Shown: one piece after another, positions 1,564 through 39,070 of the stretch
Layout: the number at the start of each line of letters is the position of its first letter
Numbering within the stretch: position 1 is the stretch's first letter
Virus record (IMG/VR): IMGVR_UViG_3300020122_000238
Span: 211,301-275,300 of that record
Strand: one strand, 5' to 3'
Length of the DNA: 64,000 bases
Notes under the pieces: model-generated
What the model was told of the DNA's origin: nothing
The model's input: the letters and a program-made list of their open reading frames with translations, nothing else
The model's database searches: none
Made by a program: the position numbers and the translations under genes

Positions 1564-1810
1564 ATGGGACGCCTGGTAGTTACCGTGAGGGGAGAATGCG
1601 AGCACCACAAGCGACGCGGACATCTACTGTGATGTCCGCGTCGCTTGTGGTGCAACGATCCTCCGCGTCGAGATGATAGGGGACTACCCCTCCACGGGCG
1701 CCCACATCTACGTGAAGTGCCAAAAATCTCCCGCCGAGCTGTCCGCGGCTATCGACGCTGCGGACGAGATCCCGCAATATTCAATCAGGACGGAAGTAGA
1801 GCGAAAATGA
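1564..1810 (+). pseudogene. small gene apparently split by a +1 frameshift
   Basis: ATG 1564 gives MGRLVVTVRGEC. The +1 frame continues STTSDADIYCDVRVACG...TEVERK and its stop overlaps the PurA-like ATG (ATGA). Confidence 0.5.
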
Positions 1811-3123
1811 GTAACGTAATCCTGATCGCGGGCCTCAACTACGGAGATGAGGGCAAGGGGACGACCGTCGACTACCTCGCTCGGAAGCACGAAGCGCACA
1901 CGGTCGTCCGCTACAACGGCGGAGCCCAAGCAGGCCATTCGGTGGTCCTGGAGGATGATCGGCACCACACCTTCGCCCAGTTCGGGAGCGCCACCTTCGT
2001 CCCTGGGGTGAAGACGCACCTCAGCCGGCACATGCTCATCAACCCGATCTTCATGATGTCTGAGGAGAAGCACCTCCGCACTGTCGGCGTCGAGGATGCC
2101 TTCGAACGGATGACCATCGAACGGGATGCGCTGATCACGACTCCCTACCATGTCGCCGCGAATCGCATCCGGGAGATGGCTCGCTCAAACCGCCACGGAT
2201 CTTGTGGGATGGGAATCGGCGAGACGGTGAGCAGTCACCTGTTCCACCCTCAAGAGGATCTCCGGATTGGGGATCTGGAAGGGCCAATCACCGCGCGATT
2301 GGAGCAGATCCGAGCGCGGTATTTGTGGGAGCTGGCTACTCTGCACATTCCCGAGTGCAAGTTCCGCGACTACGATTGCATCTGCCCGTTCAAGCATGAA
2401 TGGGGCATGCTCTTGAACAAGAGCCTTCTCCCCTTGATTGTGGGGTTGCTCACGGGATTTCTCAAGCTCCCGCTCAAGGTTGTCGATGAGACCTACCTCC
2501 CGCTCATCATGGGGGAAGGGACCACGATCTTCGAGGGTGCTCAGGGTGTCCTCCTTGATCAGGACTACGGGTTCCACCCCTACACGACCTGGTCCGACAC
2601 GACCTTCAGCAACGCCCTCAACCTGATCGAAGGCTTCTCTGGAGACGTAAGGAAGATCGGGATCGTTCGATCCTACATGACCCGGCACGGGGCGGGCCCA
2701 TTCGTCACGGAAGATGTCACCCTCCAGCTCCCCTCCACGAAGGTTGAGCACAACTCGCTCAATCCCTGGCAATCGAATTTCCGGGTGGGGCATTTCGACG
2801 CCTTCGCGACCAATTACGCCCTCAAGGTGATTGGGGGTGTCGACGAGATCGCCATGACACACTGCGATGTGCCAAGTAGTGGTAAAATTTGTGTTGGATA
2901 CAGGGGAGAGTTTACCCCCGAAGTGCTTCAGGATATGCCGCATGTGAAGCATATTCGTGAAGACCTCGACGTTCGTACGGGTATCACAAATGCTCTTTTC
3001 AATGTCTTTCCGGTGTACTTGACCGATGTGGCAGAGAAGGATTTCATCCCCAAAATTGAAGATTTCGTGGGGACTCCCATCACCATCAAGTCGTACGGCC
3101 CCACGGCCAAGGACAAGCGATAA
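1807..3123 (+). CDS. purA: adenylosuccinate synthetase (PurA)-family ligase, divergent
   Basis: Motifs GLNYGDEGKG, RYNGGAQAGH, GSCGMGIGE, FEGAQGVLLD, YMTRHGAGPF, FRVGHFD, THCD, SYGP; start at ATG 1807 (MSNVILIAG). Confidence 0.9.
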   Translation: MSNVILIAGLNYGDEGKGTTVDYLARKHEAHTVVRYNGGAQAGHSVVLEDDRHHTFAQFGSATFVPGVKTHLSRHMLINPIFMMSEEKHLRTVGVEDAFERMTIERDALITTPYHVAANRIREMARSNRHGSCGMGIGETVSSHLFHPQEDLRIGDLEGPITARLEQIRARYLWELATLHIPECKFRDYDCICPFKHEWGMLLNKSLLPLIVGLLTGFLKLPLKVVDETYLPLIMGEGTTIFEGAQGVLLDQDYGFHPYTTWSDTTFSNALNLIEGFSGDVRKIGIVRSYMTRHGAGPFVTEDVTLQLPSTKVEHNSLNPWQSNFRVGHFDAFATNYALKVIGGVDEIAMTHCDVPSSGKICVGYRGEFTPEVLQDMPHVKHIREDLDVRTGITNALFNVFPVYLTDVAEKDFIPKIEDFVGTPITIKSYGPTAKDKR

Positions 3124-4037
3124 TGGACCCCATCAAGATCATCCTCCCGCCCACCAGGCCCAAGCACGCGACGAACGCGTGGGAAGCCCTCATGGCGGAT
3201 GATGATGGTATCCTTGAGGGTGATACCGCGACCTTCACCTTCGACACGAAGGTTGCGGAAGGGGACCTCTGCGACATCTACCGAGGCACCTACAACGGCC
3301 GCCCGGCGGCTTTGAAGGTGTCCCATGGGGTCGACGTCAACGACCTCGTCGAGCATGAGGCGGACGTCATCCGGCACCTCTTCCCCGCAGAAGAGGCGAA
3401 CGTCGGGTTCCTCCGCTACCTCTCCAAGCTCAGCTACTCCTTCCATGACGAACGGGAGGGAAAGCGGATCAACGTCTTCCCCTGGCTCGGAGAACATGTC
3501 TCCGTCGCCGACATCCTGAAGGCGTATCCAGGCGGCATCGAGTACCAAAACATGGTCTGGATGTTCAAGCGTGGACTGGAAGGCCTCGGATACGTTCACG
3601 AAAAGAACGTCATTCACGGTGCGGTCCTCCCCCCGCATCTGCTGATCCATCCGGCCGACCACGGGGCCAAGCTGATCGACTGGTCCTACGCCGTCCTCAA
3701 CGCGGACGCACGACGGAACAAGGTCCGGGCCATGTCCGCACCCTGGAGGTCCTTCTATGCCCCCGAGATTCCCGGGAAAGGGATCCCGACGGCGGCGACG
3801 GATATCTACATGCTGGCCAAGTGCATGGTCGCTCTGCAAGGCGGGGACGTCACCACGGACGCGATGCCGGATACGACCCCAGAGCCCATTCAGAGGTTCT
3901 TGAGGGAGTGCCTGTCTCCCATGCAGCACCTTCGGCCGAACAGCGCATGGGATCTCGTCGAGGAGTTCAACGCGCTTCTTCGCTCCGTGATCGGCCCGCC
4001 GAAATACTTCAAGTTCGAGATGTCCCCCAAGGTGTAA
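3123..4037 (+). CDS. atypical Ser/Thr protein kinase-fold protein
   Basis: AALKV (Lys), VEHEA (Glu), VIHGAVLPPHLLI catalytic-loop variant, LIDWSY, FYAPE, TDIYML; TAATG-coupled to the PurA-like gene. Confidence 0.8.
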   Translation: MDPIKIILPPTRPKHATNAWEALMADDDGILEGDTATFTFDTKVAEGDLCDIYRGTYNGRPAALKVSHGVDVNDLVEHEADVIRHLFPAEEANVGFLRYLSKLSYSFHDEREGKRINVFPWLGEHVSVADILKAYPGGIEYQNMVWMFKRGLEGLGYVHEKNVIHGAVLPPHLLIHPADHGAKLIDWSYAVLNADARRNKVRAMSAPWRSFYAPEIPGKGIPTAATDIYMLAKCMVALQGGDVTTDAMPDTTPEPIQRFLRECLSPMQHLRPNSAWDLVEEFNALLRSVIGPPKYFKFEMSPKV

Positions 4038-4597: not shown

Positions 4598-5299
4598 ATG
4601 GGACGTCCTGCCACAGACCTGACGGATTTCAGGTCTGGTAAACTAACAGCCACACATCGAGAAGGGAGCACTGCTCAAGGAGCTGCTCTCTGGTTCTGCC
4701 GTTGCGATTGCGGGGAATTCGTACTCGTTCGAGGCACCAAGCTCAAATCAGGACAGATACAATCCTGTGGGTGCGGGATGCGTGAGTACCAAAACAGCCC
4801 AAAAGACTGGGAGATTCACGGTCAGGCGGGCACCCCAAAACGCAAGCCCACATCACTTTACAACACCTGGACCCTGATGCGATCCAGGTGTTGTAAAGTG
4901 AGAAACCCTGACTATCCGTCATATGGCGGGCGGGGGGTACAAGTGTGTGAAAGATGGCTAAATAGCTTCACGGCTTTCCAAGAAGATATGGGGCCGAAGC
5001 CGGGAGCCTCATACACAATCGATCGTATCGATGTCAACGGGAACTACACCCCCGAAAATTGTAGGTGGGCCACACGTAAAGAACAGGCGAGAAACCGCCG
5101 AGATAATGTCTTTGTGTCTTACGAAGGTGAGACGCTGTGCCTCACAAACTGGTCCGAACGTTTCGGGGTTGCAGCTAGAGACATCAAACGAAGGCTGTAC
5201 TTGGGCTGGTCTATTGAGCGAGCCCTGAGAGAACCTTCTCGTATGCTACCCAAGAGGCGACATGGTGACTCCGAAAGAAGTGGGCTGGGGATCGTATAA
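4598..5299 (+). CDS. free-standing HNH homing endonuclease-like protein
   Basis: CRCDCG...SCGC, YGGRGVQVCERW, TIDRIDVNGNYTPENCRWATRKEQARNRR; lower GC than neighbours; paralog of 28305-28940. Confidence 0.85.
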   Translation: MGRPATDLTDFRSGKLTATHREGSTAQGAALWFCRCDCGEFVLVRGTKLKSGQIQSCGCGMREYQNSPKDWEIHGQAGTPKRKPTSLYNTWTLMRSRCCKVRNPDYPSYGGRGVQVCERWLNSFTAFQEDMGPKPGASYTIDRIDVNGNYTPENCRWATRKEQARNRRDNVFVSYEGETLCLTNWSERFGVAARDIKRRLYLGWSIERALREPSRMLPKRRHGDSERSGLGIV

Positions 5300-6389
5300 A
5301 TCCTATGAAGGACCGATTTGGCTCGGTCGCGATACCCCCTACAAGATGCCCGACGCCCCTACAAGTGCGGAGAAAGTGATGACTGTCATCACAAGTACGG
5401 AAGGGGGGTCCTTCTCAGCGATCAACATGTACGACCGCATGGTTATTTCATGCGGCATTTTGCAGTGGGGCGAGGCAGGCCAGTACAGCGTCTCCGATAT
5501 GATCGGGGCCATCGTTGACCAGGCAGGGGGCTTCCCGAAGCCTTTCCAAACCCAGCTCTCCAACGTCGACATCAACTTCGAGAAGAACGCCAAGGGGCGC
5601 TGGAGGTTCTTCTTCCGGGACTTCCGAGGTGAGGTCGACCGTCTCGGAGAGCAGAAGCAGCTCTTCTTGCTCCGCTCGAATGGCCTGAAGGGGACATGGG
5701 ACGAGGGCTCCAAGGAGTACGCCAAGAGCTGGGCAGCGGCTATCGCGAGCACCCTGGCACTCCCCGAGGCGCAGAAGGTCCAGGTTGCCTTCACGGTCCC
5801 GAAACTCTTGAGCTTCATCACGCCCGAGGCCCATGCGATCCTTTGGGAAGGGTCTCTCACGACGGACGCATCCGCCATGTCTTCTGGCTGGATCGGGGCT
5901 CTCCGTTCGGCCTACCTTTCCTTCGCCGCCAATCTCCCCATGGTCGCAAGCAACCAGCTCAAGATCGCGGTCGCGAAGTCAAAGGCTCCGAAGTGGTCCT
6001 CGGACTGGTGCATCGACATCTTGAAGCAGCTCACCTTTGGGCCGCAGATCACGATCTACCCGGTCCGCTACAACGGGATCCGGCCGGTCATTGAGCGGAT
6101 CTACGGTGTGGACCTACCTGACTTCGCTGCGGATCTCCAGGCATGGAGCGCGAAGCTGGGGATCGACCCGACGGATTCGATGCCTCCTTTCCTGACCCCG
6201 AAAGAGATTCAGATGGAGCTGATCGCAGAGGGTTATGACCTCGGGCCGGCGGGAGCTGATGGGCGGATTGGGGTCAAGACCACGGATGCCTTGTTTGCAT
6301 TCCAGGCAATACACGGGCTCAAGGTCGACGGAATCATCGGACCCATGACCCGCAAGGCTCTTCTGGCCGAGTGGCAGCGGCGGAACTAG
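5262..6389 (+). CDS. putative endolysin / peptidoglycan hydrolase with C-terminal PG-binding domain
   Basis: N-terminal TEGG..AIN.YD..S.GILQW lysozyme-like motif; C-terminal GYDLGPAGADGRIG...FQAIHGLKVDGIIGP PG_binding_1-type motif. Confidence 0.7.
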   Translation: MVTPKEVGWGSYKSYEGPIWLGRDTPYKMPDAPTSAEKVMTVITSTEGGSFSAINMYDRMVISCGILQWGEAGQYSVSDMIGAIVDQAGGFPKPFQTQLSNVDINFEKNAKGRWRFFFRDFRGEVDRLGEQKQLFLLRSNGLKGTWDEGSKEYAKSWAAAIASTLALPEAQKVQVAFTVPKLLSFITPEAHAILWEGSLTTDASAMSSGWIGALRSAYLSFAANLPMVASNQLKIAVAKSKAPKWSSDWCIDILKQLTFGPQITIYPVRYNGIRPVIERIYGVDLPDFAADLQAWSAKLGIDPTDSMPPFLTPKEIQMELIAEGYDLGPAGADGRIGVKTTDALFAFQAIHGLKVDGIIGPMTRKALLAEWQRRN

Positions 6390-9238: not shown

Positions 9239-9859
9239 TTGGTGTCCATAGAAGGGATGCCCCCTCGTCACCATCAACTAGACCCCCAAAGTGGAATGGG
9301 TATGAGCCCTCCGCACTGCCTCGTCTGTCGGGCCAGCTTCAACCCCAACGAGCCGCTCACCTCATGCGACCATATCTCGATCGACGACCTGAAGATCCAG
9401 ACAGTCTACGACATCGACATGGACGAGAAGCCCATCGGCATGGGGCTCTCGGGGGAGTGCTTCAACCTGAAGTGCCCCGACTGCAAGCAGACCTTCATGC
9501 AGCTCCGCAAGTCCATGCACGGGCTCTTCTATGGGTGCCCTTCCTACCCCGCGTGCAAGGGCACTCACGGGGCCAATGCGGACGGCGCTCCGAAGGGCAT
9601 CCCTGGAGACTTCGCGACCCGTCAGGCCCGTATAGCGGTTCACCTGGTCTTCGATCGTATATGGAATCAACCTGGCTCCAACCTGACCCGAATCCAGGCC
9701 TATACCTGGATGGCTTGGGAAATGAGGCTGGGAATCATGGAAGCCCATATCGCACGCTTCGACATTGAAATGTGCGAGAAGCTCGTCTCCCTGGTGAAAA
9801 AACACTTCGGGGTCACGAACGCGTGGGAAGCCATCCTCGACGACTCCATCTGGGATTGA
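9239..9859 (+). CDS. topoisomerase C4 zinc-finger / DUF3268-like protein with C-terminal tag
   Basis: CPDC...FYGCPSYPAC, RQARIAVHLVFDRIW, AYTWM, HIARFD..C; ends TNAWEAILDDSIWD; exact start uncertain. Confidence 0.7.
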   Translation: MVSIEGMPPRHHQLDPQSGMGMSPPHCLVCRASFNPNEPLTSCDHISIDDLKIQTVYDIDMDEKPIGMGLSGECFNLKCPDCKQTFMQLRKSMHGLFYGCPSYPACKGTHGANADGAPKGIPGDFATRQARIAVHLVFDRIWNQPGSNLTRIQAYTWMAWEMRLGIMEAHIARFDIEMCEKLVSLVKKHFGVTNAWEAILDDSIWD

Positions 9860-10627: not shown

Positions 10628-11953
10628 ATGACGGCCACCCAAATGCACTTTCGGATCGATGGGGACGACTTCACTCGCATCGCCAGGGATTTCTTTCTGG
10701 AGGAGCGCCCTGATGCTGCGTGGCGCTTCATCACGGAAGGCCTGATGGGTGGTGAGCCAGGACAAGCCGAGCACTACGCCAAGCTCATCCTCAACGGAAA
10801 GACCAAGCTCATCGGCAACGAGACCGTGGGGCTGGAGCCGGTCGACGATGACGCGGCTGACTTTCAAAAGCAGGCCCGGTACATCTACGCCGGGCGCATC
10901 CGTAAAGAGGGCCGATGGTGGCGGCCGAGAGCCAAGGTCACGAACTTCGGCCCCGAGGATTGGCCGAAGGGAGCTGTGGCAGGTGATCAAGCCACCACGG
11001 CAGGCAAGGCGCATCTCCACGAGATCGGACGTCAGCGCGTCGCCCACTACGAGCTCAAGGACGAGCGCGTCTTCGATGTCGAAGGGGATTCCCTCATCTT
11101 CGAGCCGTGTGGAGAGCCACCGCATTGGTGGCCGGTTAACCGCACGACCGATGCCGCCCTCAAGGATTTCTTGGCCGCCGGGCGCAAGCTGGAGCTGGAT
11201 GGCTGGTCGCGTCGCTACCAGGTCCGTACCAAGAAGATCACCCCGCCGCCCCTCACGGACGACGAAAAGAGGGCCATTGCTGCCAAGCGGGCCAAGGAAG
11301 ACGAGGAAGATCGGAAGAAGATTGCAGCCTTCTCGATGAAGTGCACCATCATCGGGGCTCAGGTGGTGCTCCAAGCCGGCGAGGACACGTTCGACATGCC
11401 CTTGGAGGACGGGACGACGATCAAGGTCCCGCGGGCTCCGTTCGAAAACTGGGCCCTCCGGAACACGTCGCTGAGCCACCTCGCCCCGGCGTGGCAACCA
11501 ATATCCACGCCGGGGATGAAGATGCCGGGGGACGATGTCTTCCACACGGACTGGGTTCTCGGGGCCCAGCAGACGCTCAAGTCGGCCTATGAGGGCCCGG
11601 TCAAGGATGCCTCCTGGACTGCACGGTTCGATCTGCAACGGAAGCTGGGCAACTGGGAGTGTGGTGTCGTCGTCTCGGGGGAAGATGTGACGGGTGTGGT
11701 CGGCAAGGGCATCCTTGTGCTGTCCGACCTCGACCCCAAGAACCTCGAAGCCGTGATGAAGTCGAAAGCCGTCATCACGCAAGCGGGAGGGAGGCTCGCG
11801 CACCTGGCTCTGGTGGCCATGGAGCACTGCGTCCCGATCCTGCTTGTCCCCGACGCTCTGACCCGATACCCCAAGGGGGCGAAGTTGACCCTCTCGCCGA
11901 AAGACGGGAAGATCCACACGAGGGAGATCGGGGCCATCTACGACTGCGGTTGA
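10628..11953 (+). CDS. protein with C-terminal PEP-utilising enzyme mobile (phospho-His swivel) domain
   Basis: KAVITQAGGRLAHLALVAMEHCVPILLV...GAKLTLSPKDGKI matches the GGxxSHAAIVARE.GIP pattern; N-terminal ~330 aa unknown. Confidence 0.7.
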   Translation: MTATQMHFRIDGDDFTRIARDFFLEERPDAAWRFITEGLMGGEPGQAEHYAKLILNGKTKLIGNETVGLEPVDDDAADFQKQARYIYAGRIRKEGRWWRPRAKVTNFGPEDWPKGAVAGDQATTAGKAHLHEIGRQRVAHYELKDERVFDVEGDSLIFEPCGEPPHWWPVNRTTDAALKDFLAAGRKLELDGWSRRYQVRTKKITPPPLTDDEKRAIAAKRAKEDEEDRKKIAAFSMKCTIIGAQVVLQAGEDTFDMPLEDGTTIKVPRAPFENWALRNTSLSHLAPAWQPISTPGMKMPGDDVFHTDWVLGAQQTLKSAYEGPVKDASWTARFDLQRKLGNWECGVVVSGEDVTGVVGKGILVLSDLDPKNLEAVMKSKAVITQAGGRLAHLALVAMEHCVPILLVPDALTRYPKGAKLTLSPKDGKIHTREIGAIYDCG

Positions 11954-13950: not shown

Positions 13951-14694
13951 TCATTGGCCAACGCCAGGCAGACGCACAAGTTTCAGGGCCCCGTTGTGGC
14001 TAACGAGAGGCGCCAGCTCGGGACTCCGGAACACGTCGAACAGGTGCATATCCTGACCGTCGACCGTGCAGCCCAACGAGACAAGGGTGACCGTCTGGCT
14101 GTAGTCCGTGTGCGCCATGTTGTGTCGCCACCCACAACCCTGAATGACGCGGACGAAGCGCCCCTTGGAGTCCTTCGAAAGAGAGACATTGGCTTCCCCT
14201 CGGATGCCCTTGTACCCCACGCCCTCGAAGTGCCAGCCGTAGTTCTCGACGAAGCCCGGGTGCGAGAGAATGGCGTTGTCGAGGACCCAGTGCTTGCCGA
14301 CGTTGCACACGAGGCCCTCAGGGTTCCCTTGCGCAGCGAGAGCCGTGTCAATCCGGCCGCTATGGGCGAGCATTGCAGCCGTTGAAGAATTGAACGGCTG
14401 AATCGAAGGCCCGAGAGTAACAACTTTCTGCGTCCAGATGAGATCCGCCAGCTTCGGGGTGAGTAGAGAACAGCCAAGAAGATCCGCGAGGTGCTGCTCC
14501 GTTTCGGCGGAAGCGTTGATCCGCACGCCCTCGATTTTGAGCGCATCCGAGAAGACCTGGAACTCGGCGTGGTGATCGCCATGGTCGGAGGTGACCGTGG
14601 ACCACAAGATAGGGTCAAAGGTCCCTTCTGCGACGAGTGCTCGGATTGCTTGTTCGCGAGCAGGGCCAGCGGACGGGGGAAGGTTCAGGCTCAT
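13951..14694 (-). CDS. hypothetical, enzyme-like (GKHWV, NYGWH, H...DYSQ)
   Basis: 247-aa ORF with clustered His/Trp/Asp motifs; family not assigned. Confidence 0.7.
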   Translation of the reverse strand: MSLNLPPSAGPAREQAIRALVAEGTFDPILWSTVTSDHGDHHAEFQVFSDALKIEGVRINASAETEQHLADLLGCSLLTPKLADLIWTQKVVTLGPSIQPFNSSTAAMLAHSGRIDTALAAQGNPEGLVCNVGKHWVLDNAILSHPGFVENYGWHFEGVGYKGIRGEANVSLSKDSKGRFVRVIQGCGWRHNMAHTDYSQTVTLVSLGCTVDGQDMHLFDVFRSPELAPLVSHNGALKLVRLPGVGQ

Positions 14695-14727
14695 ACTGAG
14701 GATCTTCCTAAAAAAACCCTATACACG

Positions 14728-15765
14728 ATGGCCATGATCGGACTCCGGGTGCCTCCCGAAACTGCTCAACTCCTGAAGCAGATCGACCTCAAGGGATTTG
14801 GGGTCCCCGAGCCTATGGATCAAGCGCACATCACGCTGCTCCATTTGGGGGATGATGTTCCGATTGAGTCTCTGACCGAGGCAATTCGGGTGTTGTACAC
14901 AGTGGCCTCGAAGACCAGACCATTTGCTGTGCAGACGAGCCGAGCGACAACCTTCCCGCCCCAAGATGGGAAGAAGACTCCCATGATTGCTCAGGTGGAC
15001 TCCAATGCCCTCCACGACTTCCACCGAGCCCTACAAGAAGCCTTCGAGGCTGCCGGGATCGACTTCTCGAAGAAGTGGCCCGAGTTCAAGCCTCATGTGA
15101 CTTTGGGGTATTCTAAAGACCCTTTGGTCGATGCAGACCACGTATTCGATGAGACTTTCCCTACGGTCGAGTGGGGCGCCCATGAAGCTGTGCTTTTTGG
15201 GGGTGACAAAGGAAAACAGACCATGATGGTAACAACCCCCTTCTCTCTGAGCCCCTTTCGCCAGGCTGTCCGACAGGCCATGTTCCGAGCTGCCAACCGG
15301 CCCTACGAACACGACCAGGAGGCTCAAAGCGAGAAGAAGGAGCTTCTTAAGAAGCTCGAATTGCTTTCCCAAGCAGCCTATGCTTCGGGAGACAACGCAA
15401 TGGCGTCCTTCGCAGAAAGTCTGGGGATGCAACTCGAACGAGCGGACACAGCCTGGAACTTCAGTCTCCCCCAAGAACGGAAACTCCGGGAAGGCCTACA
15501 ACAGTACCATCACCTGATGTCTCACCCGGCTGAGCTTGATCGACTGTTTGAAGAGAAGAACCGAGCCCCTCAAGTCAGCCCCGCGGAGCAGACGAGAAAC
15601 CTTCGGATCCGAATCAACCAGCTCCTCGATGCCGCGAAGCAAGATGGGGACAACTGGGTGATCAGTTTCGCAACCAATATCGGGAACATGGTGCGAAACA
15701 ACCGACAGCTATCTCCCGCTCAAAGCAACGCGCTGGAGAAAGCATTCAAGAAGTACCGTCTTTGA
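14728..15765 (+). CDS. 2H phosphoesterase (2'-5' RNA ligase/LigT-like) with helical C-terminal extension
   Basis: Two HxT motifs: AHITLLHLG and PHVTLGY. Confidence 0.8.
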   Translation: MAMIGLRVPPETAQLLKQIDLKGFGVPEPMDQAHITLLHLGDDVPIESLTEAIRVLYTVASKTRPFAVQTSRATTFPPQDGKKTPMIAQVDSNALHDFHRALQEAFEAAGIDFSKKWPEFKPHVTLGYSKDPLVDADHVFDETFPTVEWGAHEAVLFGGDKGKQTMMVTTPFSLSPFRQAVRQAMFRAANRPYEHDQEAQSEKKELLKKLELLSQAAYASGDNAMASFAESLGMQLERADTAWNFSLPQERKLREGLQQYHHLMSHPAELDRLFEEKNRAPQVSPAEQTRNLRIRINQLLDAAKQDGDNWVISFATNIGNMVRNNRQLSPAQSNALEKAFKKYRL

Positions 15766-18578: not shown

Positions 18579-18634
18579 CCCGCGGATCCCGATCCCAAGC
18601 CGTACTAGTACGGCTTGGGATCGGGATCCGCGGG
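18579..18634. repeat. 56-bp perfect palindrome between convergent genes
   Basis: CCCGCGGATCCCGATCCCAAGCCGTACT|AGTACGGCTTGGGATCGGGATCCGCGGG, no loop. Confidence 0.95.
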
Positions 18635-21045: not shown

Positions 21046-21369
21046 ATGACCGACCCCACTTCGATTCCGACCGCAACCGCAACTGCAACTGCAACCCCGA
21101 AGCGCATCAAGCGCCCGACCAAGAAGACCTCGGCGAAGAAAACCGCCAAGAAGGTGGCCAAGAAGACCGTGGACACCACCATCAACGCCGTGGCTGCGTG
21201 GGCGACCACCAAGGCCAAGGCCAAGAAGGGTGACCGTGCCATGTTCGAGGCTGCCGCTGGCTTCCTCAACCAGCTCGCCAGCGCTCAGGCGGCGCTCCTC
21301 GCGAACCTCAGCCCCAGCGTGCTGAAGGCCGTCAAGGATCGCCTCGCTGCACTCCCGTACGGAAAGTGA
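21046..21369 (+). CDS. Ala/Lys-rich histone-H1-like protein
   Basis: KKTSAKKTAKKVAKK; extreme codon bias; GGTGTA-N10-ATG; strong terminator follows. Confidence 0.75.
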   Translation: MTDPTSIPTATATATATPKRIKRPTKKTSAKKTAKKVAKKTVDTTINAVAAWATTKAKAKKGDRAMFEAAAGFLNQLASAQAALLANLSPSVLKAVKDRLAALPYGK

Positions 21370-21373
21370 ACGC

Positions 21374-21415
21374 AAAAAAGCCCCCGGAGCAGCACGCTGC
21401 TCCGGGGGCTTTTTT
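21374..21415. terminator. bidirectional intrinsic terminator
   Basis: AAAAAAGCCCCCGGAGCAGC / GCTGCTCCGGGGGCTTTTTT, 20 bp, between convergent genes. Confidence 0.9.
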
Positions 21416-21419
21416 CATT

Positions 21420-22283
21420 TCAGCCCGCCTTCTTCCAGCCGTCTTCCGTCAACGTGACCCTGAACGTCCCCTTCGGGTTGTCCTTCGAGGTCCCGTTGTC
21501 ACGCTCGTTCAGCCAGAACCGGATGCCCAGCCCCGGCTTCTGGTGAAGAAGCCACACGAAGCAGACCCCGCCGCCATTCTCCAGCTCGCGAGAGACGACC
21601 ATCGGACGACCGTCGCGGTGGACCAGGATGCGCTCATCCGCGTCCTTGATGCGACGGAGGTTGTTGACCGTGCAGTTCGAGTTACGCGTGCAACCCGCCC
21701 GCTTCGCCGAGTGAATGACCGCCGTGCCGACGATCGTGTAGTACTTGCCAGCGATCTGGCAGGGAACCGTCTCGATGAAGGGGTGCTTCAACCCCTTCGA
21801 GAAACGATCCGCCGCCTCCTCCAGAGCCACCTGAAGGCCATCCTTCGGGGGAGCCGGAGCAGGCTCGTTCAGGTCCTCCAGAAGGAGGTCCATGTCCGCC
21901 GGATCGAGCGCGAGATTCACACCCGGGTTCGAGGGAGGAGTCTTGTCCTCCTCCTTCTTCCCCTGGAGGAAGTTCTGGAGAGCCTCTTCCGTCTTGGACT
22001 GGACAGGACGGAAGAGATTCCGGAGTGCCTCTTCCATCTTGTCCACGACAGGAGGAAGCTGCATCGCCATCGGAGGCTGCGGGAAGAGCCTGGATAGAAT
22101 CGTCCAGGCGTGGCGGTTCGTCTCCGCCGGGTACTGCTTGCCCATCGGCTCCAACATCAGCAGCTCCAGGAACTTGGTCCGCACAGCGTCCGCCTTGTCG
22201 GGCCGGAGAGCACCCTCCGAGACGAGAACCGTCGTGAGGGTCTGGAGTAGAAACGAGTTCGAGCCTTCCTTGATCTTCGCCAT
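21420..22283 (-). CDS. hypothetical protein
   Basis: ORF from MAKIKEGS; GC3-rich. Confidence 0.75.
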   Translation of the reverse strand: MAKIKEGSNSFLLQTLTTVLVSEGALRPDKADAVRTKFLELLMLEPMGKQYPAETNRHAWTILSRLFPQPPMAMQLPPVVDKMEEALRNLFRPVQSKTEEALQNFLQGKKEEDKTPPSNPGVNLALDPADMDLLLEDLNEPAPAPPKDGLQVALEEAADRFSKGLKHPFIETVPCQIAGKYYTIVGTAVIHSAKRAGCTRNSNCTVNNLRRIKDADERILVHRDGRPMVVSRELENGGGVCFVWLLHQKPGLGIRFWLNERDNGTSKDNPKGTFRVTLTEDGWKKAG

Positions 22284-34759: not shown

Positions 34760-34999
34760 TTAGACGTAACGTGGATCCCGCAAGTACGGAAACAGCTCTT
34801 GCATCGAACCAGGCTTGGCCGGAGGGAACCCTTCACCATCCGGCACCCCCAGCATCTTGCTGAAGTTCGGCTCGCCCGTTTCAGCCGCCATATCATTCAG
34901 GGTATCGGCGAAAGACGCTGCCAGATCCTCCGGAAGATCGGGGTTGGCGTCGATGGCCTTTTGTTCTGCGGGCGTCCAGTTCGTCGTCTTCATCGTCAC
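34760..34999 (-). CDS. hypothetical protein
   Basis: Coupled to upstream gene. Confidence 0.6.
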   Translation of the reverse strand: MTMKTTNWTPAEQKAIDANPDLPEDLAASFADTLNDMAAETGEPNFSKMLGVPDGEGFPPAKPGSMQELFPYLRDPRYV

Positions 35000-36129
35000 T
35001 TCGCCGTGTTGCGCAGCTCGGTCGAGCTGATGTCCCAGCGGCCCGGGACGTCCTTGAACAGAAAGACAAGGATGTCGACGACATCCTTGTGGGCGTAGAT
35101 GATGTCACTGCCCGTCTTGTACTCACCCTTGACGAGCCGACCGAGCACGTAAAAGCGCGTGCAGTGGGCCGAGAACTCCTCCAGCAAGGGCGCGACTTCG
35201 ATGCCCCACTTGGGGTCGAGCATCGTCGCCAGGGTGTCCGCCCCGAGCACGAAGGCAGCACCCGGGAAGGCCTTCGCCTTGTCGAGGAAGAGCGGGTCGT
35301 TCTCCGACAAGAGGTAGTTACGCCCTCGCATCCCAGCCACCCGTTGCAACAGCTCCGGGACCGTGACAGGCGTCTTGTGGACCGGGTTGATGGTGGTCAT
35401 GTGGACCAACGTCTGGTAGAACCTGTAGGCGAGAAGATGCGCTTCCCGGCCCCCCTTCTCGTGCCCATCATGGAAGGGATTGAAGCTCCCCGGGTAGATA
35501 AGGGTCGTCAGGGGGTTGATGTCCGCAGCCGTTCCGCGCGTCCCATCCGCCTTGAAGTAGGGGTGAGCGAAGAGACGAGCCCGCGCTTTGTCCATGGCCT
35601 CGATGGGCTCGAACTTCACCCCGAGGATGTCGGGGTCGACCGGGAGGCCCATCGCTCGCGAGAGGATGTTCAACCCCATCGAATCGGCGATCATCCCGTC
35701 CACCGTGCGCTGCTCCCAGCCCACTCCTTTGGGGATGACAGCGGAGGCGATGTAGCAGCCCCCATCACCGAAGGCCGCGACGAAGATCCGGTGATCTCCC
35801 CGGTGCTCCCGAGTCGAAGCGACCGAAGCAGCGAGGCCAATCCCGATTGCCTTCGAGCCAGGCTTCACGGCCCGGAGGTACGCGGTCATGGCGAGGTCGA
35901 GCGCGATGTTCTCGTCGCAGTACTTCTCGGGGATGAATCCGAGATGGCGCGCGGTGGCCTCGGGCTCGTACGGGAAGCACGCTTCGATGAAGAAGTTAGA
36001 AATGCCCGGAGGAGCCCAGAGGCGGGACTGGACCCCTGCTCCGGCCCCCGTGGCGATGACGACGACCCGTGGAGCGTCAGCCCCAAGGTCGCGGAGGATT
36101 TCGATGTTGCGTGTGGTGTTGGTGCTCAT
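34996..36129 (-). CDS. CinA-like domain fused to NMN adenylyltransferase-like (HxGH) domain
   Basis: ATGAG...PPGISNFFIEACFPY; YPGSFNPFHDGH; FLDKA...FVLGADT; ISSTELR; class A motif upstream. Confidence 0.75.
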   Translation of the reverse strand: MSTNTTRNIEILRDLGADAPRVVVIATGAGAGVQSRLWAPPGISNFFIEACFPYEPEATARHLGFIPEKYCDENIALDLAMTAYLRAVKPGSKAIGIGLAASVASTREHRGDHRIFVAAFGDGGCYIASAVIPKGVGWEQRTVDGMIADSMGLNILSRAMGLPVDPDILGVKFEPIEAMDKARARLFAHPYFKADGTRGTAADINPLTTLIYPGSFNPFHDGHEKGGREAHLLAYRFYQTLVHMTTINPVHKTPVTVPELLQRVAGMRGRNYLLSENDPLFLDKAKAFPGAAFVLGADTLATMLDPKWGIEVAPLLEEFSAHCTRFYVLGRLVKGEYKTGSDIIYAHKDVVDILVFLFKDVPGRWDISSTELRNTAK

Positions 36130-36283
36130 GTTGTCGGCTCTACAAGACGAGAAAGCCACGGATCAACCAGGATTCTCTTCGGGGTTGTGGGTCCCCACAG
36201 AGATCGGACCAGTGGCGTCGATGTAGCATAGCCTAACCTTCCAGGGCTTCCTTCTCCCGAAGGACATGGTGCTTTGGGGCACC

Positions 36284-36786: not shown

Positions 36787-37878
36787 CTACTTCGCAGCCG
36801 GCTCGTCGCGCACAGCCCAGCCGATGGCCGGACGCACGATGAGGCTCTCCTCGTTCTGTGATACGCCAACGAAGCCCCCGAGGAACTCCATCTCGAACTT
36901 CGCGTCGTAGTAGAGCCAGGTGAACGGGACCTTCGAGAGACCGAGCGAGAAATCGGAGGGGTTGGGCCCTCCGCACATGTCCCCGATGCCCCGGGACCAC
37001 TTGTCGAGCGCGCGGTTCTTCCCGCGCGTGAGGTACGGGAAGAGCACGTTGATCCAACCCGTCACGTACGGCCCGCCGCTACCCCCGCCCTCATGGTAGA
37101 AGCTCTCCCAGAACTTGGGGTCGGCCTTACCTTCGGCCGACTCGATGACCTTGTCCAACACGGGGAGCAGCGCGTCAATCCACCACCCAAGGTCGTACTC
37201 CGCGAGGACCGCTGCCCGCGCCTTGACCCGACGCCAGTCTTCCACGGTGCCGAGCAGGGTGATCTCCGGGATGCCGCATGCCGTCCGCATGCCGTATGTG
37301 AAGTAGGCGCTCATGGCGTCCATGAGGACAATCTCGGAGGCCGCCTTCTCGATCAGGCCGGTCGTCGAGAAGTCCGCAACGATGAGGTCACGGGTCTTGC
37401 CGATGTGCTGGGCGAGCTGGTCAGAGAACTCACCGAAGGCTCCCGGCCAATCATTATCGGCGGAGCCCTTCACGAAGAAGTCCCGCACGACCTCGATGTG
37501 CTCCTTCCCCTCGTGCTTGACGAAGCGGCTCCGGAGCTTCTCCGCATTCTCATTGACATGGGCCGCGAAGCCCTGCGCGATGCAGAGCCAGAAGTCGTCC
37601 GGGCTCAGGGCGAACGGGTAGTGGTGATCGAAGGCGATGTGGACAGCCGAGATGAAGGGGTTGATGCTGACGGTGTCCCCTTTTCTCTCCGACTTGCGGG
37701 TTCCGATGAGGGTCTCCGAGCTGGAGGCCGCTGCTTCGGGGGGAGCACCCCCAACGAGCCGGTGAATGGCTTCACCAACGGCAATACCGGCATCATAGGG
37801 CCGGTATTTGTTTTTGATCTGGGTGTACGGAGCTTCCGCGAGGGCGATCTTTTTGATCGTGGCTTTGAAGGTCTGCAT
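36787..37878 (-). CDS. DUF4419 family protein
   Basis: NPFISAVHIAFDHHYPFALSPDDFWLCIAQG, FVKHEGK, CGIPEITLLGTVEDW; GGTGTA-N10-ATG. Confidence 0.8.
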   Translation of the reverse strand: MQTFKATIKKIALAEAPYTQIKNKYRPYDAGIAVGEAIHRLVGGAPPEAAASSSETLIGTRKSERKGDTVSINPFISAVHIAFDHHYPFALSPDDFWLCIAQGFAAHVNENAEKLRSRFVKHEGKEHIEVVRDFFVKGSADNDWPGAFGEFSDQLAQHIGKTRDLIVADFSTTGLIEKAASEIVLMDAMSAYFTYGMRTACGIPEITLLGTVEDWRRVKARAAVLAEYDLGWWIDALLPVLDKVIESAEGKADPKFWESFYHEGGGSGGPYVTGWINVLFPYLTRGKNRALDKWSRGIGDMCGGPNPSDFSLGLSKVPFTWLYYDAKFEMEFLGGFVGVSQNEESLIVRPAIGWAVRDEPAAK

Positions 37879-38272: not shown

Positions 38273-39070
38273 CTCAAGCCACCAAAAATGAGGCAAGTAC
38301 TCTGCGGGTACGAATGGAGATTGACGTCCAGCCACTCGCATAGGTTGGAAATTCACCAGAAGGCGAAGCAAGGTTTCGAACTCCCAAGGTTCTGGTGTTT
38401 TGGGGTCCTTGAGCCATTCTTCAATGAAACCGCGCTGCTCGTATCGAAATCTGGACAGAAAAACTCTTGTCTCAAGAAGTTTGTGCGCCGCGACCATCTG
38501 ATCATAGGCAAGAGCATCCAGTCGAGCCTGCATCTCTACAGAGATGCAGGCTTCCGGCACTCGAAGTCGGAAGCGTTCGGGAACAACAGTTTGAGGGTTC
38601 CAGTCTTCAAGACCCAAGGATGCTCGAAGTTCATTGATATAGGACAGCAGAGAAGAAGACAGACGAAACAATTCTCGTGTCCCCTCCACATAGATCCAGT
38701 CCGACGAAAACCGACTGTGGAGGAGTTTTTCGTCCTCCATGTCTCCTGTTACCCATGCCAGAAGCTCAATCTTGCGCGTCGATGACGACTGTATATTGTT
38801 CAGTCGTTGATGTATGTTGGTGGCAAATCCAATCTTTACCACGTCCGCATCAAGTCGAACAATGTATACCCCTGTAGCTTTTGGCCGAGGGTAAATAGGC
38901 GCGTCCAACTGTGCGGGCATCAATGTGTGCATGGCCCTGCGCCAATAAAAAAGACATGCTGCACATGTGAAGGATACCCAATATCCGTGCCCCTCATGCA
39001 CCTCAACGGTCGTTGAGGTGCATGAGGGGCACGGAGGGGTAAGCGCGGGCGGGAAGAAAACAAGAACCAC
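38258..39070 (-). CDS. GIY-YIG superfamily (T5orf172/MUG113-like) protein with N-terminal zinc ribbon
   Basis: CPSC...CAAC; GVYIV...VKIGFATNIHQRL...EKLLHSRF...ELF; AT-richer. Confidence 0.75.
   Translation of the reverse strand: MVLVFFPPALTPPCPSCTSTTVEVHEGHGYWVSFTCAACLFYWRRAMHTLMPAQLDAPIYPRPKATGVYIVRLDADVVKIGFATNIHQRLNNIQSSSTRKIELLAWVTGDMEDEKLLHSRFSSDWIYVEGTRELFRLSSSLLSYINELRASLGLEDWNPQTVVPERFRLRVPEACISVEMQARLDALAYDQMVAAHKLLETRVFLSRFRYEQRGFIEEWLKDPKTPEPWEFETLLRLLVNFQPMRVAGRQSPFVPAEYLPHFWWLETESL
38984..39035. repeat. 25-bp perfect inverted repeat inside the 5' coding region of the GIY-YIG gene
   Basis: TCCGTGCCCCTCATGCACCTCAACG-GT-CGTTGAGGTGCATGAGGGGCACGGA. Confidence 0.95.

What the first reader, a model, noticed from the sequence alone, without database searches (positions are those of the whole stretch)
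1807..4037. Translationally coupled divergent PurA-like ligase and non-canonical kinase
Seen: PurA motifs with substitutions (GGAQAGH for GGxNAGH, TRHG for TRVG, THCD for TKLD), joined by TAATG to a kinase-fold protein with HGA for HRD and DWS for DFG. Established: the Asp in GDEGKG marks PurA rather than PurZ (Ser). From memory, and unverified, similar PurA-like plus kinase pairs recur with vWA and NUDIX genes in some bacteria and phages and are thought to be conflict or modification systems. Inference: the ligase probably acts on a non-standard nucleotide or amino-acid substrate, possibly one activated by the kinase.
Basis: partly seen in the sequence, partly recalled or inferred. Interest (0 to 1): 0.6.

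Follow-up and report, generated by a model that had tools for sequence, protein, structure and literature searches.

The report
PurA-like ligase, vWA, pseudokinase cassette
The two genes are real and belong to a widespread, apparently uncharacterised three-gene cassette of large phages and filamentous bacteria, whose PurA-like enzyme keeps its catalytic core but has lost the aspartate pocket, so it probably makes something other than adenylosuccinate.

Summary
Window 1807-3123 (+) encodes a 438-aa PurA-fold protein and 3123-4037 (+) a 304-aa kinase-fold protein. They are joined by a one-base TAATG overlap, and every quoted motif is present.

The window is the end of a 275-kb phage record. Just upstream lie an NrtR-type Nudix-wHTH gene, NAMPT and a 319-aa vWA/MIDAS protein.

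The vWA-like and PurA-like genes are near-obligate neighbours, and the kinase-like gene usually joins them:
- 58 of 80 bacterial loci read Nudix>kinase>vWA>PurA.
- 52 of 81 viral loci read kinase>vWA>PurA.
- 77 of 80 vWA-anchored viral loci hold the PurA-like gene.

The PurA-like family is a clade apart from housekeeping PurA and PurZ. Five of five host genomes tested also hold a normal PurA.

The family keeps D13, K16, H41, Q224 and D333. It has lost the L-aspartate loop (T300 deleted, T301W, R303 variable, R305F) and changed the IMP-phosphate contacts.

The kinase-like protein keeps Lys, Glu and the DFG Asp but lacks the catalytic Asp. Most relatives carry an N-terminal J domain.

Best reading: a GTP-dependent ligase using a non-aspartate amine, working with a vWA adaptor in an NAD/ADP-ribose conflict setting. 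The product is unknown. I found no published description.

The parts
1591..1664 (.). Long inverted repeat (34-nt arms, 85% complementary, perfect 22-bp core, 6-nt loop). It lies between the preceding small ORF (1199-1561) and the PurA-like start, 143 nt upstream of the ATG. It could be a hairpin boundary or an operator; its role is unknown.
   Evidence: sequence read. It was not picked up as an intrinsic terminator, because there is no T-run.
1807..3123 (+). PurA-like GTP-dependent ligase, 438 aa. The catalytic core is kept (D14, K17, H44, the Q of FEGAQG and the D of THCD, own numbering). The L-aspartate loop is lost and the IMP-phosphate contacts are changed. It belongs to a clade distinct from housekeeping PurA and PurZ.
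3123..4037 (+). Atypical kinase-fold protein, 304 aa, translationally coupled to the ligase by the TAATG overlap. K65, E79 and D186 are kept. HRD is replaced by HGA, the catalytic-loop Asn by His, and the Gly-rich loop by GDLxDxY. Unlike most relatives it has no J domain.

Best explanation
The two genes are two thirds of a conserved cassette with three core proteins:
- a vWA-fold protein with a complete MIDAS metal site;
- a divergent PurA-like ligase;
- an atypical kinase-fold protein, which in most relatives has an N-terminal J domain.

In bacteria the cassette is headed by an NrtR-type Nudix-wHTH repressor of the ADP-ribose-sensing kind. In this phage the order is NrtR-like, NAMPT, vWA-like (all just upstream of the window), five small ORFs, then PurA-like and kinase-like. 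The same window also holds an ADP-ribosylglycohydrolase, an NMNAT-like gene and a 2H phosphoesterase.

Shown: the PurA-like enzyme keeps the residues for GTP binding and for phosphorylating a 6-oxopurine (P-loop, D13, H41, Q224, D333). It has lost the L-aspartate pocket and altered the 5'-phosphate pocket. It is an extra paralogue beside a normal PurA.

Inferred: it still carries out PurA-type chemistry, that is GTP-driven activation of a lactam carbonyl followed by attack of an amine. The amine is not aspartate, and the nucleotide may be larger or different from IMP. The vWA partner presents the substrate or is itself the substrate. The kinase-like protein is a nucleotide-binding scaffold or regulator that in most lineages recruits DnaK. 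The module serves virus-host conflict around NAD+/ADP-ribose rather than AMP supply or Z-DNA synthesis.
For: Cassette in the own genome: Nudix+NrtR_WHD, NAMPT and a vWA-like gene lie at G000:C1:207.4-210.9 kb, directly before the window.

Cassette elsewhere:
- Nudix>kinase>vWA>PurA in 58/80 bacterial loci and kinase>vWA>PurA in 9/80. Kinase>vWA>PurA in 52/81 viral loci.
- In a vWA-anchored survey, 77/80 viral loci hold the PurA-like gene and 74/80 the kinase-like gene.
- Junctions are tight. Nudix->kinase overlaps in 50/59, the median vWA->PurA gap is 7 nt in bacteria, and PurA->kinase overlaps in 7/8 phages of the window's type.
- The cassette is also in cultured phages. Cluster C mycobacteriophages have kinase gp250, a vWA-like gp251 split by an intein, and PurA-like gp253. 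The Rhizobium and Vibrio jumbo phages examined (RHph_TM39, phiKT1024) have the vWA>PurA pair.

Active site: G12, D13, K16, G17, H41, Q224, T239, D333, S414 and G416 are invariant. Family-wide changes are N38Q, T128S, T129C, R131M/L, V273H, T300 deleted, T301W, R303 to G/Q/S, R305F and K331H. Seven housekeeping PurAs and two PurZs keep T301, R/K303 and R305. PMC8342488 states that R303 contacts the aspartate substrate and that the matching loop in PurZ contacts aspartate.

Not an ordinary PurA or PurZ: the family is a separate clade (SH-aLRT 99). NCBIfam scores are 168 against a cut-off of 402 for PurA and 42 against 300 for PurZ. Five of five bacterial genomes also hold a housekeeping PurA.

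vWA partner: the fold is confirmed (AF2 pLDDT 90.7; Ku80 vWA, integrin I domains, NorD).

NAD/ADP-ribose context: NrtR-like best hit is 'ADPR responsive transcriptional repressor'. NAMPT, ARG, NMNAT-like and 2H phosphoesterase are in the same genome. Related phages have an NMNAT-like gene or NADAR beside the cassette.
Against: - No biochemical evidence exists. The substrate, product and even catalytic competence are inferred from residue conservation.
- Residue roles in E. coli PurA other than R303 and the aspartate loop are recalled from memory.
- The alignment around R143 is uncertain.
- The NAD/ADP-ribose link is contextual. Most phage cassettes (kinase>vWA>PurA) have no Nudix or NAMPT gene within 10 kb, and NrtR-family regulators can sense other ligands.
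- Physical interaction of the three proteins was not tested, because the complex predictor was unavailable.
- The surveyed loci are the best 80 hits of each scan, not random samples.
Confidence: 0.5

Rival explanations
1. It is an ordinary auxiliary metabolic gene. The phage carries a working adenylosuccinate synthetase to boost AMP and ATP supply, for example to feed NAD+ resynthesis by NAMPT and NMNAT. The kinase and vWA genes are unrelated neighbours.
For: Full-length PF00709 match with the catalytic D13, H41 and Q224 intact. NAD salvage genes lie nearby.
Against: The aspartate loop is lost (T300 deleted, T301W, R303 not conserved, R305F), while housekeeping PurA and PurZ keep it. Scores are far below the PurA equivalog cut-offs. 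The family is a separate clade. Adjacency to the vWA-like gene is near-obligate (77/80). No PurB was found in the 275-kb record. Bacteria with the gene already have a PurA.
Confidence: 0.08
2. It is a PurZ-type enzyme that makes the precursor of 2-aminoadenine for a Z-DNA genome, as the PHROG and RefSeq label '2-aminooxy adenylosuccinate synthetase' implies.
For: The best PHROG is 1211, which carries that label. RefSeq copies of Cluster C phage records use the same label.
Against: Position 13 is Asp, not the Ser found in all phage PurZ. The protein lies outside the PurZ clade. The NCBIfam PurZ model scores 42 bits against a cut-off of 300. No MazG or HD (DatZ-type) gene is in the record. The aspartate loop that PurZ keeps is lost here.
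Confidence: 0.02
3. It is a direct aminase. With the aspartate pocket replaced by His, Trp and Phe, the enzyme uses ammonia or another small amine to turn a deaminated adenine nucleotide (IMP, ITP, IDP-ribose or deamino-NAD) straight back into the adenine form without PurB. This would repair nucleotide pools damaged by deaminase-type or NADase-type defences.
For: The core chemistry is retained while the carboxylate-binding arginines are lost. There is no PurB in the record. New invariant His126, Cys129 and His273 sit at the positions that touch the ribose-phosphate in PurA, which would suit an extra phosphate. The setting is an NAD/ADP-ribose island.
Against: It does not explain the obligate vWA partner or the J-domain pseudokinase, nor why bacteria carry the same cassette under a repressor. 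There is no direct evidence for ammonia use.
Confidence: 0.12
4. The PurA-like protein no longer acts as a ligase. It works as a GTP-dependent switch or scaffold that, with the vWA adaptor and the J-domain protein, remodels or assembles a target protein. This would be like the MoxR-vWA chaperone pairs.
For: vWA proteins commonly act as adaptors for NTPase remodellers. NorD is among the fold matches, and the theme is reviewed in PMC9503650. A J domain is present in most kinase-like partners.
Against: Residues needed only for chemistry on the purine are invariant across the family, which a mere switch would not require. These are D13, H41 and Q224, along with T239 and the FEGAQG motif.
Confidence: 0.1

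Closest known systems
Adenylosuccinate synthetase PurA (E. coli PurA, PDB 1ade and relatives)
   Same: Same fold over the whole length (PF00709, E 3e-63; 1ade E 6e-32). The P-loop GDxGKG, catalytic D13, H41 and Q224, T239, and guanine-specifying D333 and S414-x-G416 are kept.
   Different: About 30% identity or less. The L-aspartate loop is lost (T300 deleted, T301W, R303 variable, R305F). Other changes are V273H, N38Q, T129C, R131M and K331H. It forms a separate clade, is always paired with a vWA-like gene, and is an extra paralogue beside a true PurA.
PurZ / PurZ0 of Z-genome phages (phiVC8, S-2L, Gordonia phage Archimedes)
   Same: A phage-borne PurA homologue. It shares the PHROG 1211 label.
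   Different: PurZ has Ser at position 13 and keeps the aspartate loop. It travels with DatZ, MazZ and DpoZ, or with DutZ and DmtZ. This protein has Asp13, has lost the aspartate loop, lacks those partners in the record, and lies outside the PurZ clade.
ARG-centred bacterial systems with Nudix-HTH or WYL regulators and vWA chaperones (Iyer et al. 2022, PMC9503650)
   Same: The operon is headed by a Nudix-wHTH one-component repressor predicted to sense ADP-ribose, and a vWA protein is a component. Both are enriched in actinobacteria.
   Different: The core enzyme here is a PurA-like ligase plus a J-domain pseudokinase, not an ADP-ribosylglycohydrolase plus a phosphatase. That paper does not mention PurA or adenylosuccinate.
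TerY-P type triads (vWA protein, Ser/Thr kinase, PP2C phosphatase); recalled from memory
   Same: A vWA protein is genomically coupled to a kinase-fold protein in a compact operon linked to stress or phage defence.
   Different: No PP2C was found in the record. The kinase-fold protein lacks the catalytic Asp. The third partner is a PurA-like ligase. The PADLOC models, which are expected to include TerY, gave no hit for the vWA-like protein.
Atypical kinase-fold enzymes and pseudokinases (SelO, SidJ, POMK); recalled from memory
   Same: The protein-kinase fold keeps the nucleotide-binding Lys, Glu and DFG-Asp but lacks the canonical catalytic loop. New invariant residues (H159, H165, H172, H180, D48, D74) hint at other chemistry or a scaffold role.
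   Different: No sequence or fold match specific to any of those families. The nearest structures are ordinary Ser/Thr kinases.
Phage NAD+ salvage by NAMPT plus NMNAT (the pathway called NARP2; recalled from memory), under NrtR-type control
   Same: The own genome has NrtR-like and NAMPT genes next to the cassette and an NMNAT-like gene about 32 kb downstream of the cassette. A related phage has the NMNAT-like gene directly after the kinase-like gene.
   Different: As recalled, the vWA, PurA-like and kinase-like genes are not part of that pathway. Most cassette-bearing phages show no NAMPT or Nudix gene nearby.

Membership tests
Adenylosuccinate synthetase (PurA, EC 6.3.4.4) | PurA fold / Pfam PF00709 over the full length | tested here: met
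   E 3.3e-63, 214 bits against a cut-off of 27, residues 7-435. PDB PurA chains match at E 3e-32.
Adenylosuccinate synthetase (PurA, EC 6.3.4.4) | Reaches the curated equivalog score for PurA | tested here: not met
   NF002223 scores 167.7 against a cut-off of 402, and TIGR00184 scores 158 against 395.55.
Adenylosuccinate synthetase (PurA, EC 6.3.4.4) | Catalytic and GTP-binding residues (G12-D13-x-G-K16-G17, H41, Q224, D333, S414/G416) | tested here: met
   All are invariant in 35 family members, including the window protein. K331 is replaced by His.
Adenylosuccinate synthetase (PurA, EC 6.3.4.4) | L-aspartate-binding loop (T300, T301, R303, R305) and V273 | tested here: not met
   T300 is deleted, T301 is W, R303 is S in the window protein (G/Q/S in the family), R305 is F and V273 is H. 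Seven housekeeping PurAs keep all of these, and two PurZs keep T301, R/K303, R305 and V273. The role of R303 and of the loop is taken from PMC8342488.
Adenylosuccinate synthetase (PurA, EC 6.3.4.4) | IMP 5'-phosphate contacts (N38, T129, R143 of the partner subunit, T239) | tested here: inconclusive
   N38 is Q, T129 is C, R143 aligns to D/E/Q (the alignment is uncertain there), and T239 is kept. The residue roles are recalled from memory.
Adenylosuccinate synthetase (PurA, EC 6.3.4.4) | Groups with housekeeping PurA in a tree and is the genome's purine-pathway copy | tested here: not met
   It forms a separate clade (SH-aLRT 99), and housekeeping PurA forms its own clade (99). Five of five bacterial genomes hold a high-scoring PurA as well.
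Adenylosuccinate synthetase (PurA, EC 6.3.4.4) | Makes adenylosuccinate and complements a purA mutant | not testable with these tools
   This needs enzyme assays and genetics.
PurZ (succino-amino-deoxyadenylate synthase) | Ser in place of catalytic Asp13 | tested here: not met
   Asp is present in the window protein and in all 35 relatives, whereas phiVC8 and Bm1 PurZ have Ser. The rule is stated in PMC12884076.
PurZ (succino-amino-deoxyadenylate synthase) | Membership of the PurZ clade / curated model score | tested here: not met
   The PurZ pair is separated with support 100. NF038379 scores 42 bits against a cut-off of 300.
PurZ (succino-amino-deoxyadenylate synthase) | Z-cluster partners (DatZ HD hydrolase, MazZ/MazG) | tested here: not met
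   There is no HD or MazG match in the 275-kb record. The record is estimated to be only 58% complete, so absence is not proven.
Eukaryotic-like Ser/Thr protein kinases | Protein-kinase fold | tested here: met
   The AF2 model has pLDDT 88.4. Foldseek gives MST3, PknA/PknB and Aurora at E 1e-12 to 1e-11 and TM about 0.65-0.75. The profile search against the PDB hits Sky1p, CK2 and StkP.
Eukaryotic-like Ser/Thr protein kinases | Reaches Pfam Pkinase gathering score | tested here: not met
   27.4 bits against a cut-off of 31.7.
Eukaryotic-like Ser/Thr protein kinases | Beta3 Lys, alphaC Glu, DFG Asp, APE Glu | tested here: met
   K65, E79, D186 and E215 are invariant.
Eukaryotic-like Ser/Thr protein kinases | Catalytic loop HRDxxxxN (Asp base, Asn) and Gly-rich loop GxGxxG | tested here: not met
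   The catalytic loop reads HGAxxPxH across the family, with HGA in 95/128 surveyed proteins. The Gly-rich loop is replaced by GDLxDxY.
vWA / MIDAS proteins (partner gene, upstream of the window) | vWA fold with DxSxS-type MIDAS motif | tested here: met
   There is no Pfam hit. The AF2 model (pLDDT 90.7) matches Ku80 vWA, integrin I domains and NorD with probability 1.0. The DxTGSM motif is present in 134/151 proteins, and the GDE Asp is invariant.
NrtR-type Nudix-wHTH regulators (partner gene, upstream of the window) | Nudix domain fused to the NrtR winged-helix DNA-binding domain | tested here: met
   PF00293 matches at 8e-22 and PF21906 at 3e-23. The best NCBIfam hit is 'ADPR responsive transcriptional repressor' at 173 bits, below its cut-off of 400. 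The Nudix box REUxEExG is intact.
TerY-P triad | PP2C phosphatase as third component | tested here: not met
   There is no PP2C_2 match in the record. PADLOC models give no hit for the vWA-like protein.

The most novel reading that the evidence does not exclude
The PurA-like enzyme is a protein-modifying ligase. It activates a 6-oxopurine nucleotide with GTP and joins it through a C6-N bond to an amine on a protein. The candidate amine is the N-terminal glycine of its vWA partner, or a client held at the partner's MIDAS site. This would be a new kind of protein-nucleotide conjugate used in phage-host conflict.

Leads in its favour:
- The vWA-like protein begins with Met-Gly in 147 of 151 cases, and almost all of the 150 best representatives start exactly at profile position 1.
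- 108 of 151 end in Arg-Leu after a variable linker.
- The ligase has swapped its carboxylate-binding arginines for Trp, Phe and His.
- The two genes are near-obligate neighbours.
Probability: 0.1. Interest if true: 0.9.

Novelty: new variant of a known kind. Interest (0 to 1): 0.7.

Why it matters
- Annotation. Databases file these proteins as adenylosuccinate synthetase or, wrongly, as the Z-base enzyme PurZ. If the aspartate pocket is truly gone, hundreds of phage and bacterial annotations are misleading, and a third functional branch of the PurA superfamily awaits a substrate.
- Spread. The cassette is common. At least 590 hits were found among bacterial species genomes and 447 in IMG/VR, and the vWA partner has 1077 clusters at E 1e-30 or better.
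- Tractability. It occurs in easily handled phages, including about 200 Cluster C mycobacteriophage records and several Rhizobium and Vibrio jumbo phages. The question can therefore be tested directly.
- Biology. The tie to an ADP-ribose-type repressor, and in this phage to NAMPT, an NMNAT-like gene and an ADP-ribosylglycohydrolase, suggests a new player in the NAD+/ADP-ribose arms race.

Tried and rejected
- A DNA-level search of phage records with the two genes found nothing.
- A single-protein scan of bacterial genomes found nothing. The alignment-based scan was needed.
No statement about binding rests on it.
The claim that the cassette is self-contained therefore rests only on the precomputed Pfam tables of five example loci.
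- No ORF carries both vWA-like and PurA-like parts, so no vWA-PurA fusion was found. One long open frame in L057 carries both the Nudix and the kinase-like matches and was not resolved; a second double hit there is weak.
- Six literature searches (PurA-like, adenylosuccinate with vWA, Nudix, NrtR, J domain) found no description of the cassette. Two Aravind-lab surveys that cover vWA and Nudix systems do not mention it.
- ESM Atlas searches for the vWA-like protein returned only its own unnamed family.
- PADLOC has no model for the ligase or the vWA protein. The kinase-like protein hits only the generic kinase parts of MkoA, Mad6 and PD-T4-6.
- No separate J-domain gene was found in this phage to replace the missing fusion.
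- An attempt to cite E. coli residue roles from an H. pylori enzyme paper gave nothing useful.
Full report
**What is at the coordinates.**
The window is the last 64 kb of a 275,300-bp IMG/VR virus record (G000:C1:211301-275300). CheckV rates the record 58% complete. It has about 58% G+C and is densely packed with small genes.

An ATG at 1807 opens a 438-aa protein that ends with TAA at 3121-3123. The last A of that stop is the first base of the ATG of a 304-aa protein, which ends at 4037. So the TAATG coupling is real.

The first protein matches Pfam PF00709 over its whole length (E 3e-63) and PHROG 1211. The second scores just under the Pfam Pkinase cut-off (27.4 against 31.7 bits) but matches PHROG 3043 'kinase' at 1.8e-35.

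**The pair is part of a larger conserved cassette.**
The best cultured relatives of both proteins are in Cluster C mycobacteriophages (about 40% and 34% identity), and there the two genes lie about 2 kb apart.

Metagenomic homologues of the two proteins repeatedly share contigs. Two contexts were read first:
- A related 377-kb phage has a Nudix+NrtR-wHTH gene, NAMPT, a 325-aa unknown, then the PurA-like and kinase-like genes.
- Micromonospora echinospora has Nudix+NrtR-wHTH, a 327-aa unknown, a 336-aa unknown and the PurA-like gene in one operon.

The 327-aa protein is a homologue of the window's kinase-like protein (E 5e-39) and has the same HGAVLP loop. The 336-aa and 325-aa proteins are homologous to each other (41% identity) and carry a MIDAS-like DxTGSM motif.

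The window's own genome has the same genes just before the window starts:
- Nudix+NrtR_WHD at L008 9441-10157;
- NAMPT at about L008 10174-11553;
- the vWA-like gene at L008 11897-12856 (G000:C1:209896-210855).

Five small ORFs follow, and then the PurA-like gene.

**How general the cassette is.**
They are mainly Micromonosporaceae, Streptosporangiales, Streptomyces and Kitasatospora, and Chloroflexota, with some Myxococcota, Acidobacteriota and candidate-phyla bacteria. The same scan found 447 loci in IMG/VR, mostly on contigs of 100-500 kb.

I scanned the best 80 bacterial and 81 viral loci with HMMs built here.

| Gene order | Bacterial loci (of 80) | Viral loci (of 81) |
|---|---|---|
| Nudix>kinase>vWA>PurA | 58 | - |
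| kinase>vWA>PurA | 9 | 52 |
| window-type order (PurA followed by kinase) | - | 10 (6 with both Nudix and NAMPT) |

- Starting instead from the vWA-like protein, 77 of 80 viral loci hold the PurA-like gene and 74 the kinase-like gene. Two of the three exceptions are cut by contig ends.
- The genes are tightly packed. Nudix->kinase overlaps by 4 nt in 50 of 59 bacterial loci. The median vWA->PurA gap in bacteria is 7 nt. PurA->kinase overlaps in 7 of 8 phages of the window's type.
- A profile of the vWA-like family finds 1077 clusters at E 1e-30 or better among 1.84 billion representatives.
- Cultured carriers include Cluster C mycobacteriophages. In Cane17 the vWA-like gp251 is split by an intein-like insert at the MIDAS strand.
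- Rhizobium phage RHph_TM39 and Vibrio phage phiKT1024 have the vWA>PurA pair.

**The PurA-like enzyme.**
I aligned the family with E. coli PurA, six housekeeping PurAs from bacteria that also carry the paralogue, and two PurZs, then read the alignment in E. coli numbering.

Kept in all 35 family members: G12, D13, K16, G17, H41, E221-G-A-Q224-G, T239, R306, D333, S414 and G416.

Changed family-wide:

| E. coli residue | In the family |
|---|---|
| N38 | Q |
| I126 | H |
| T128 | S |
| T129 | C |
| R131 | M or L |
| P135 | E |
| V273 | H |
| T300 | deleted |
| T301 | W |
| G302 | Q |
| R303 | G, Q or S |
| R305 | F |
| K331 | H |

The housekeeping enzymes and both PurZs keep T301, R/K303 and R305. 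PMC8342488 states that E. coli R303 contacts both the ribose O2' and the free aspartate, and that the matching loop of PurZ contacts aspartate. The roles of the other residues I give from memory of the E. coli enzyme literature.

My reading is that the machinery for GTP binding and for phosphorylating O6 of a purine is intact. The pocket for L-aspartate is gone, and the pocket for the 5'-phosphate is altered.

Three further results agree with this:
- A maximum-likelihood tree puts the family, with the Rhizobium and Vibrio phage proteins, in one clade (SH-aLRT 99). Housekeeping PurA (99) and PurZ (100) are separate.
- NCBI's curated PurA and PurZ models are missed by wide margins.
- All five bacterial genomes tested have a high-scoring PurA as well as the paralogue.

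The phage record has no PurB, MazG or HD gene, though it is incomplete.

A 2026 survey of viral PF00709 proteins counted 481 homologues. It assigned 151 of its sequences, phage and archaeal, to PurZ and almost none of the viral ones to the PurA group, and it left the rest undiscussed (PMC12884076). Those unassigned proteins are probably this family.

**The kinase-like protein.**
The AF2 model (pLDDT 88.4) has an ordinary protein-kinase fold. The family keeps the beta3 Lys (K65), alphaC Glu (E79), DFG Asp (D186), APE Glu (E215), and D227 and R271.

The catalytic loop reads HGAxxPxH instead of HRDxxxxN, and the Gly-rich loop is GDLxDxY. New invariant residues are D48, D74, H159, H165, H172 and H180.

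It therefore probably binds a nucleotide but cannot phosphorylate in the usual way. It may be a scaffold, or it may carry out other chemistry.

Of 128 surveyed relatives, 109 have an HPD motif in the first 120 residues, and one has a Pfam DnaJ hit. So the usual form is a J domain fused to the pseudokinase. The window's protein, like others in phages where the gene follows the ligase, lacks the J domain. No other J-domain gene is in the record.

**The vWA-like protein.**
It has no Pfam hit, but the AF2 model (pLDDT 90.7) matches Ku80 vWA, integrin I domains and NorD. The MIDAS residues are conserved.

Beyond these, the protein begins Met-Gly in 147 of 151 cases and ends Arg-Leu in 108 of 151 after a variable linker. 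In the large search nearly every one of the 150 best hits starts exactly at profile position 1. A fixed free N-terminal glycine next to a ligase that has lost its amino-acid pocket is the basis of the speculative reading given under the novel case.

**Setting.**
The Nudix-wHTH protein is nearest to the 'ADPR responsive transcriptional repressor' model, and its Nudix box is intact.

Besides NAMPT, the window holds:
- an ADP-ribosylglycohydrolase (40843-41823, minus strand);
- an NMNAT-like protein (34996-36159, minus strand);
- a 2H phosphoesterase with weak likeness to anti-CBASS Acb1 (14491-15765).

Related phages place an NMNAT-like gene or NADAR beside the cassette. This points to NAD+/ADP-ribose conflict. 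Most kinase>vWA>PurA phages, however, lack such neighbours within 10 kb, so the link is suggestive only.

**Conclusion and limits.**

The most likely mechanism is PurA-type chemistry with a non-aspartate amine, carried out together with a vWA adaptor and a pseudokinase that usually recruits a chaperone. I hold it at about even odds.

The product, the physical complex and the biological role are not shown. The complex predictor was unavailable, and I found no paper describing the cassette.

Noticed in passing
Five small ORFs without matches separate the vWA-like gene from the PurA-like gene.
   Followed up: yes
window 40843-41823 (-): ADP-ribosylglycohydrolase (PF03747, E 6e-68). Together with NAMPT, the NMNAT-like gene and the Nudix gene, it shows that this phage carries a broad NAD/ADP-ribose toolkit.
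   Followed up: partly
window 34996-36159 (-): A 386-aa protein whose C-terminal part matches cytidylyltransferase-like PF01467 (23.3 bits against a cut-off of 21). It is a candidate NMNAT that would pair with NAMPT.
   Followed up: partly
window 14491-15765 (+): A 2H phosphoesterase (2_5_RNA_ligase2 3.5e-16, LigT) with a weak match to anti-CBASS Acb1 (22.6 bits, below the cut-off). It could be a cyclic-nucleotide or RNA-end processing enzyme.
   Followed up: no
window 4598-5299 (+) and 5262-6389 (+): Directly after the cassette lie an HNH endonuclease (PHROG 374, 5e-66) and a 375-aa protein with a C-terminal peptidoglycan-binding domain (endolysin-like).
   Followed up: no
window 9239-9859 (+) and 10628-11953 (+): A zinc-finger DUF3268 / Top1 zinc-ribbon protein, and a 441-aa protein with a PEP-utilising mobile domain (PHROG 11532). 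A 559-aa ORF on the opposite strand overlaps the latter.
   Followed up: no
window 36787-37878 (-): A strong match to DUF4419 (E 8e-78), a domain of unknown function, beside the NMNAT-like gene.
   Followed up: no
window 18579-18634, 38984-39035, 21367-21422, 19-65: Long perfect or near-perfect palindromes. They are a 56-bp perfect palindrome with no loop, a repeat with 25-nt arms, a 27-nt-arm hairpin with A/T runs on both sides that looks like a bidirectional terminator, and a repeat with 20-nt arms at the window start.
   Followed up: no
L001 3897-5714 (Mycobacterium phage Cane17 gp251): The vWA-like protein of Cluster C mycobacteriophages is split by an insert of about 255 aa with weak Hint/intein matches. 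The insert sits at profile position 178/179, next to the last MIDAS strand. The gene is annotated only as hypothetical.
   Followed up: partly
PHROG 1211 and RefSeq copies of Cluster C phage records: The label '2-aminooxy adenylosuccinate synthetase' (PurZ) is applied to proteins that have Asp13 and lie outside the PurZ clade. This is probably a propagated misannotation.
   Followed up: yes
window 1807-3123, protein residues about 175-200: A Cys-rich insert (three Cys in a C-x11-C-x-C pattern) is shared only with the closest phage relatives (P0005, P0007, P0008) and is absent from bacterial members. It may be a small metal site.
   Followed up: no
L185 (Vibrio phage phiKT1024): NADAR and TROVE (Ro60-like) genes flank the vWA>PurA pair in this cultured jumbo vibriophage.
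   Followed up: no
window 1-64000: No tRNA or tmRNA gene was found in the window (ARAGORN).
   Followed up: yes
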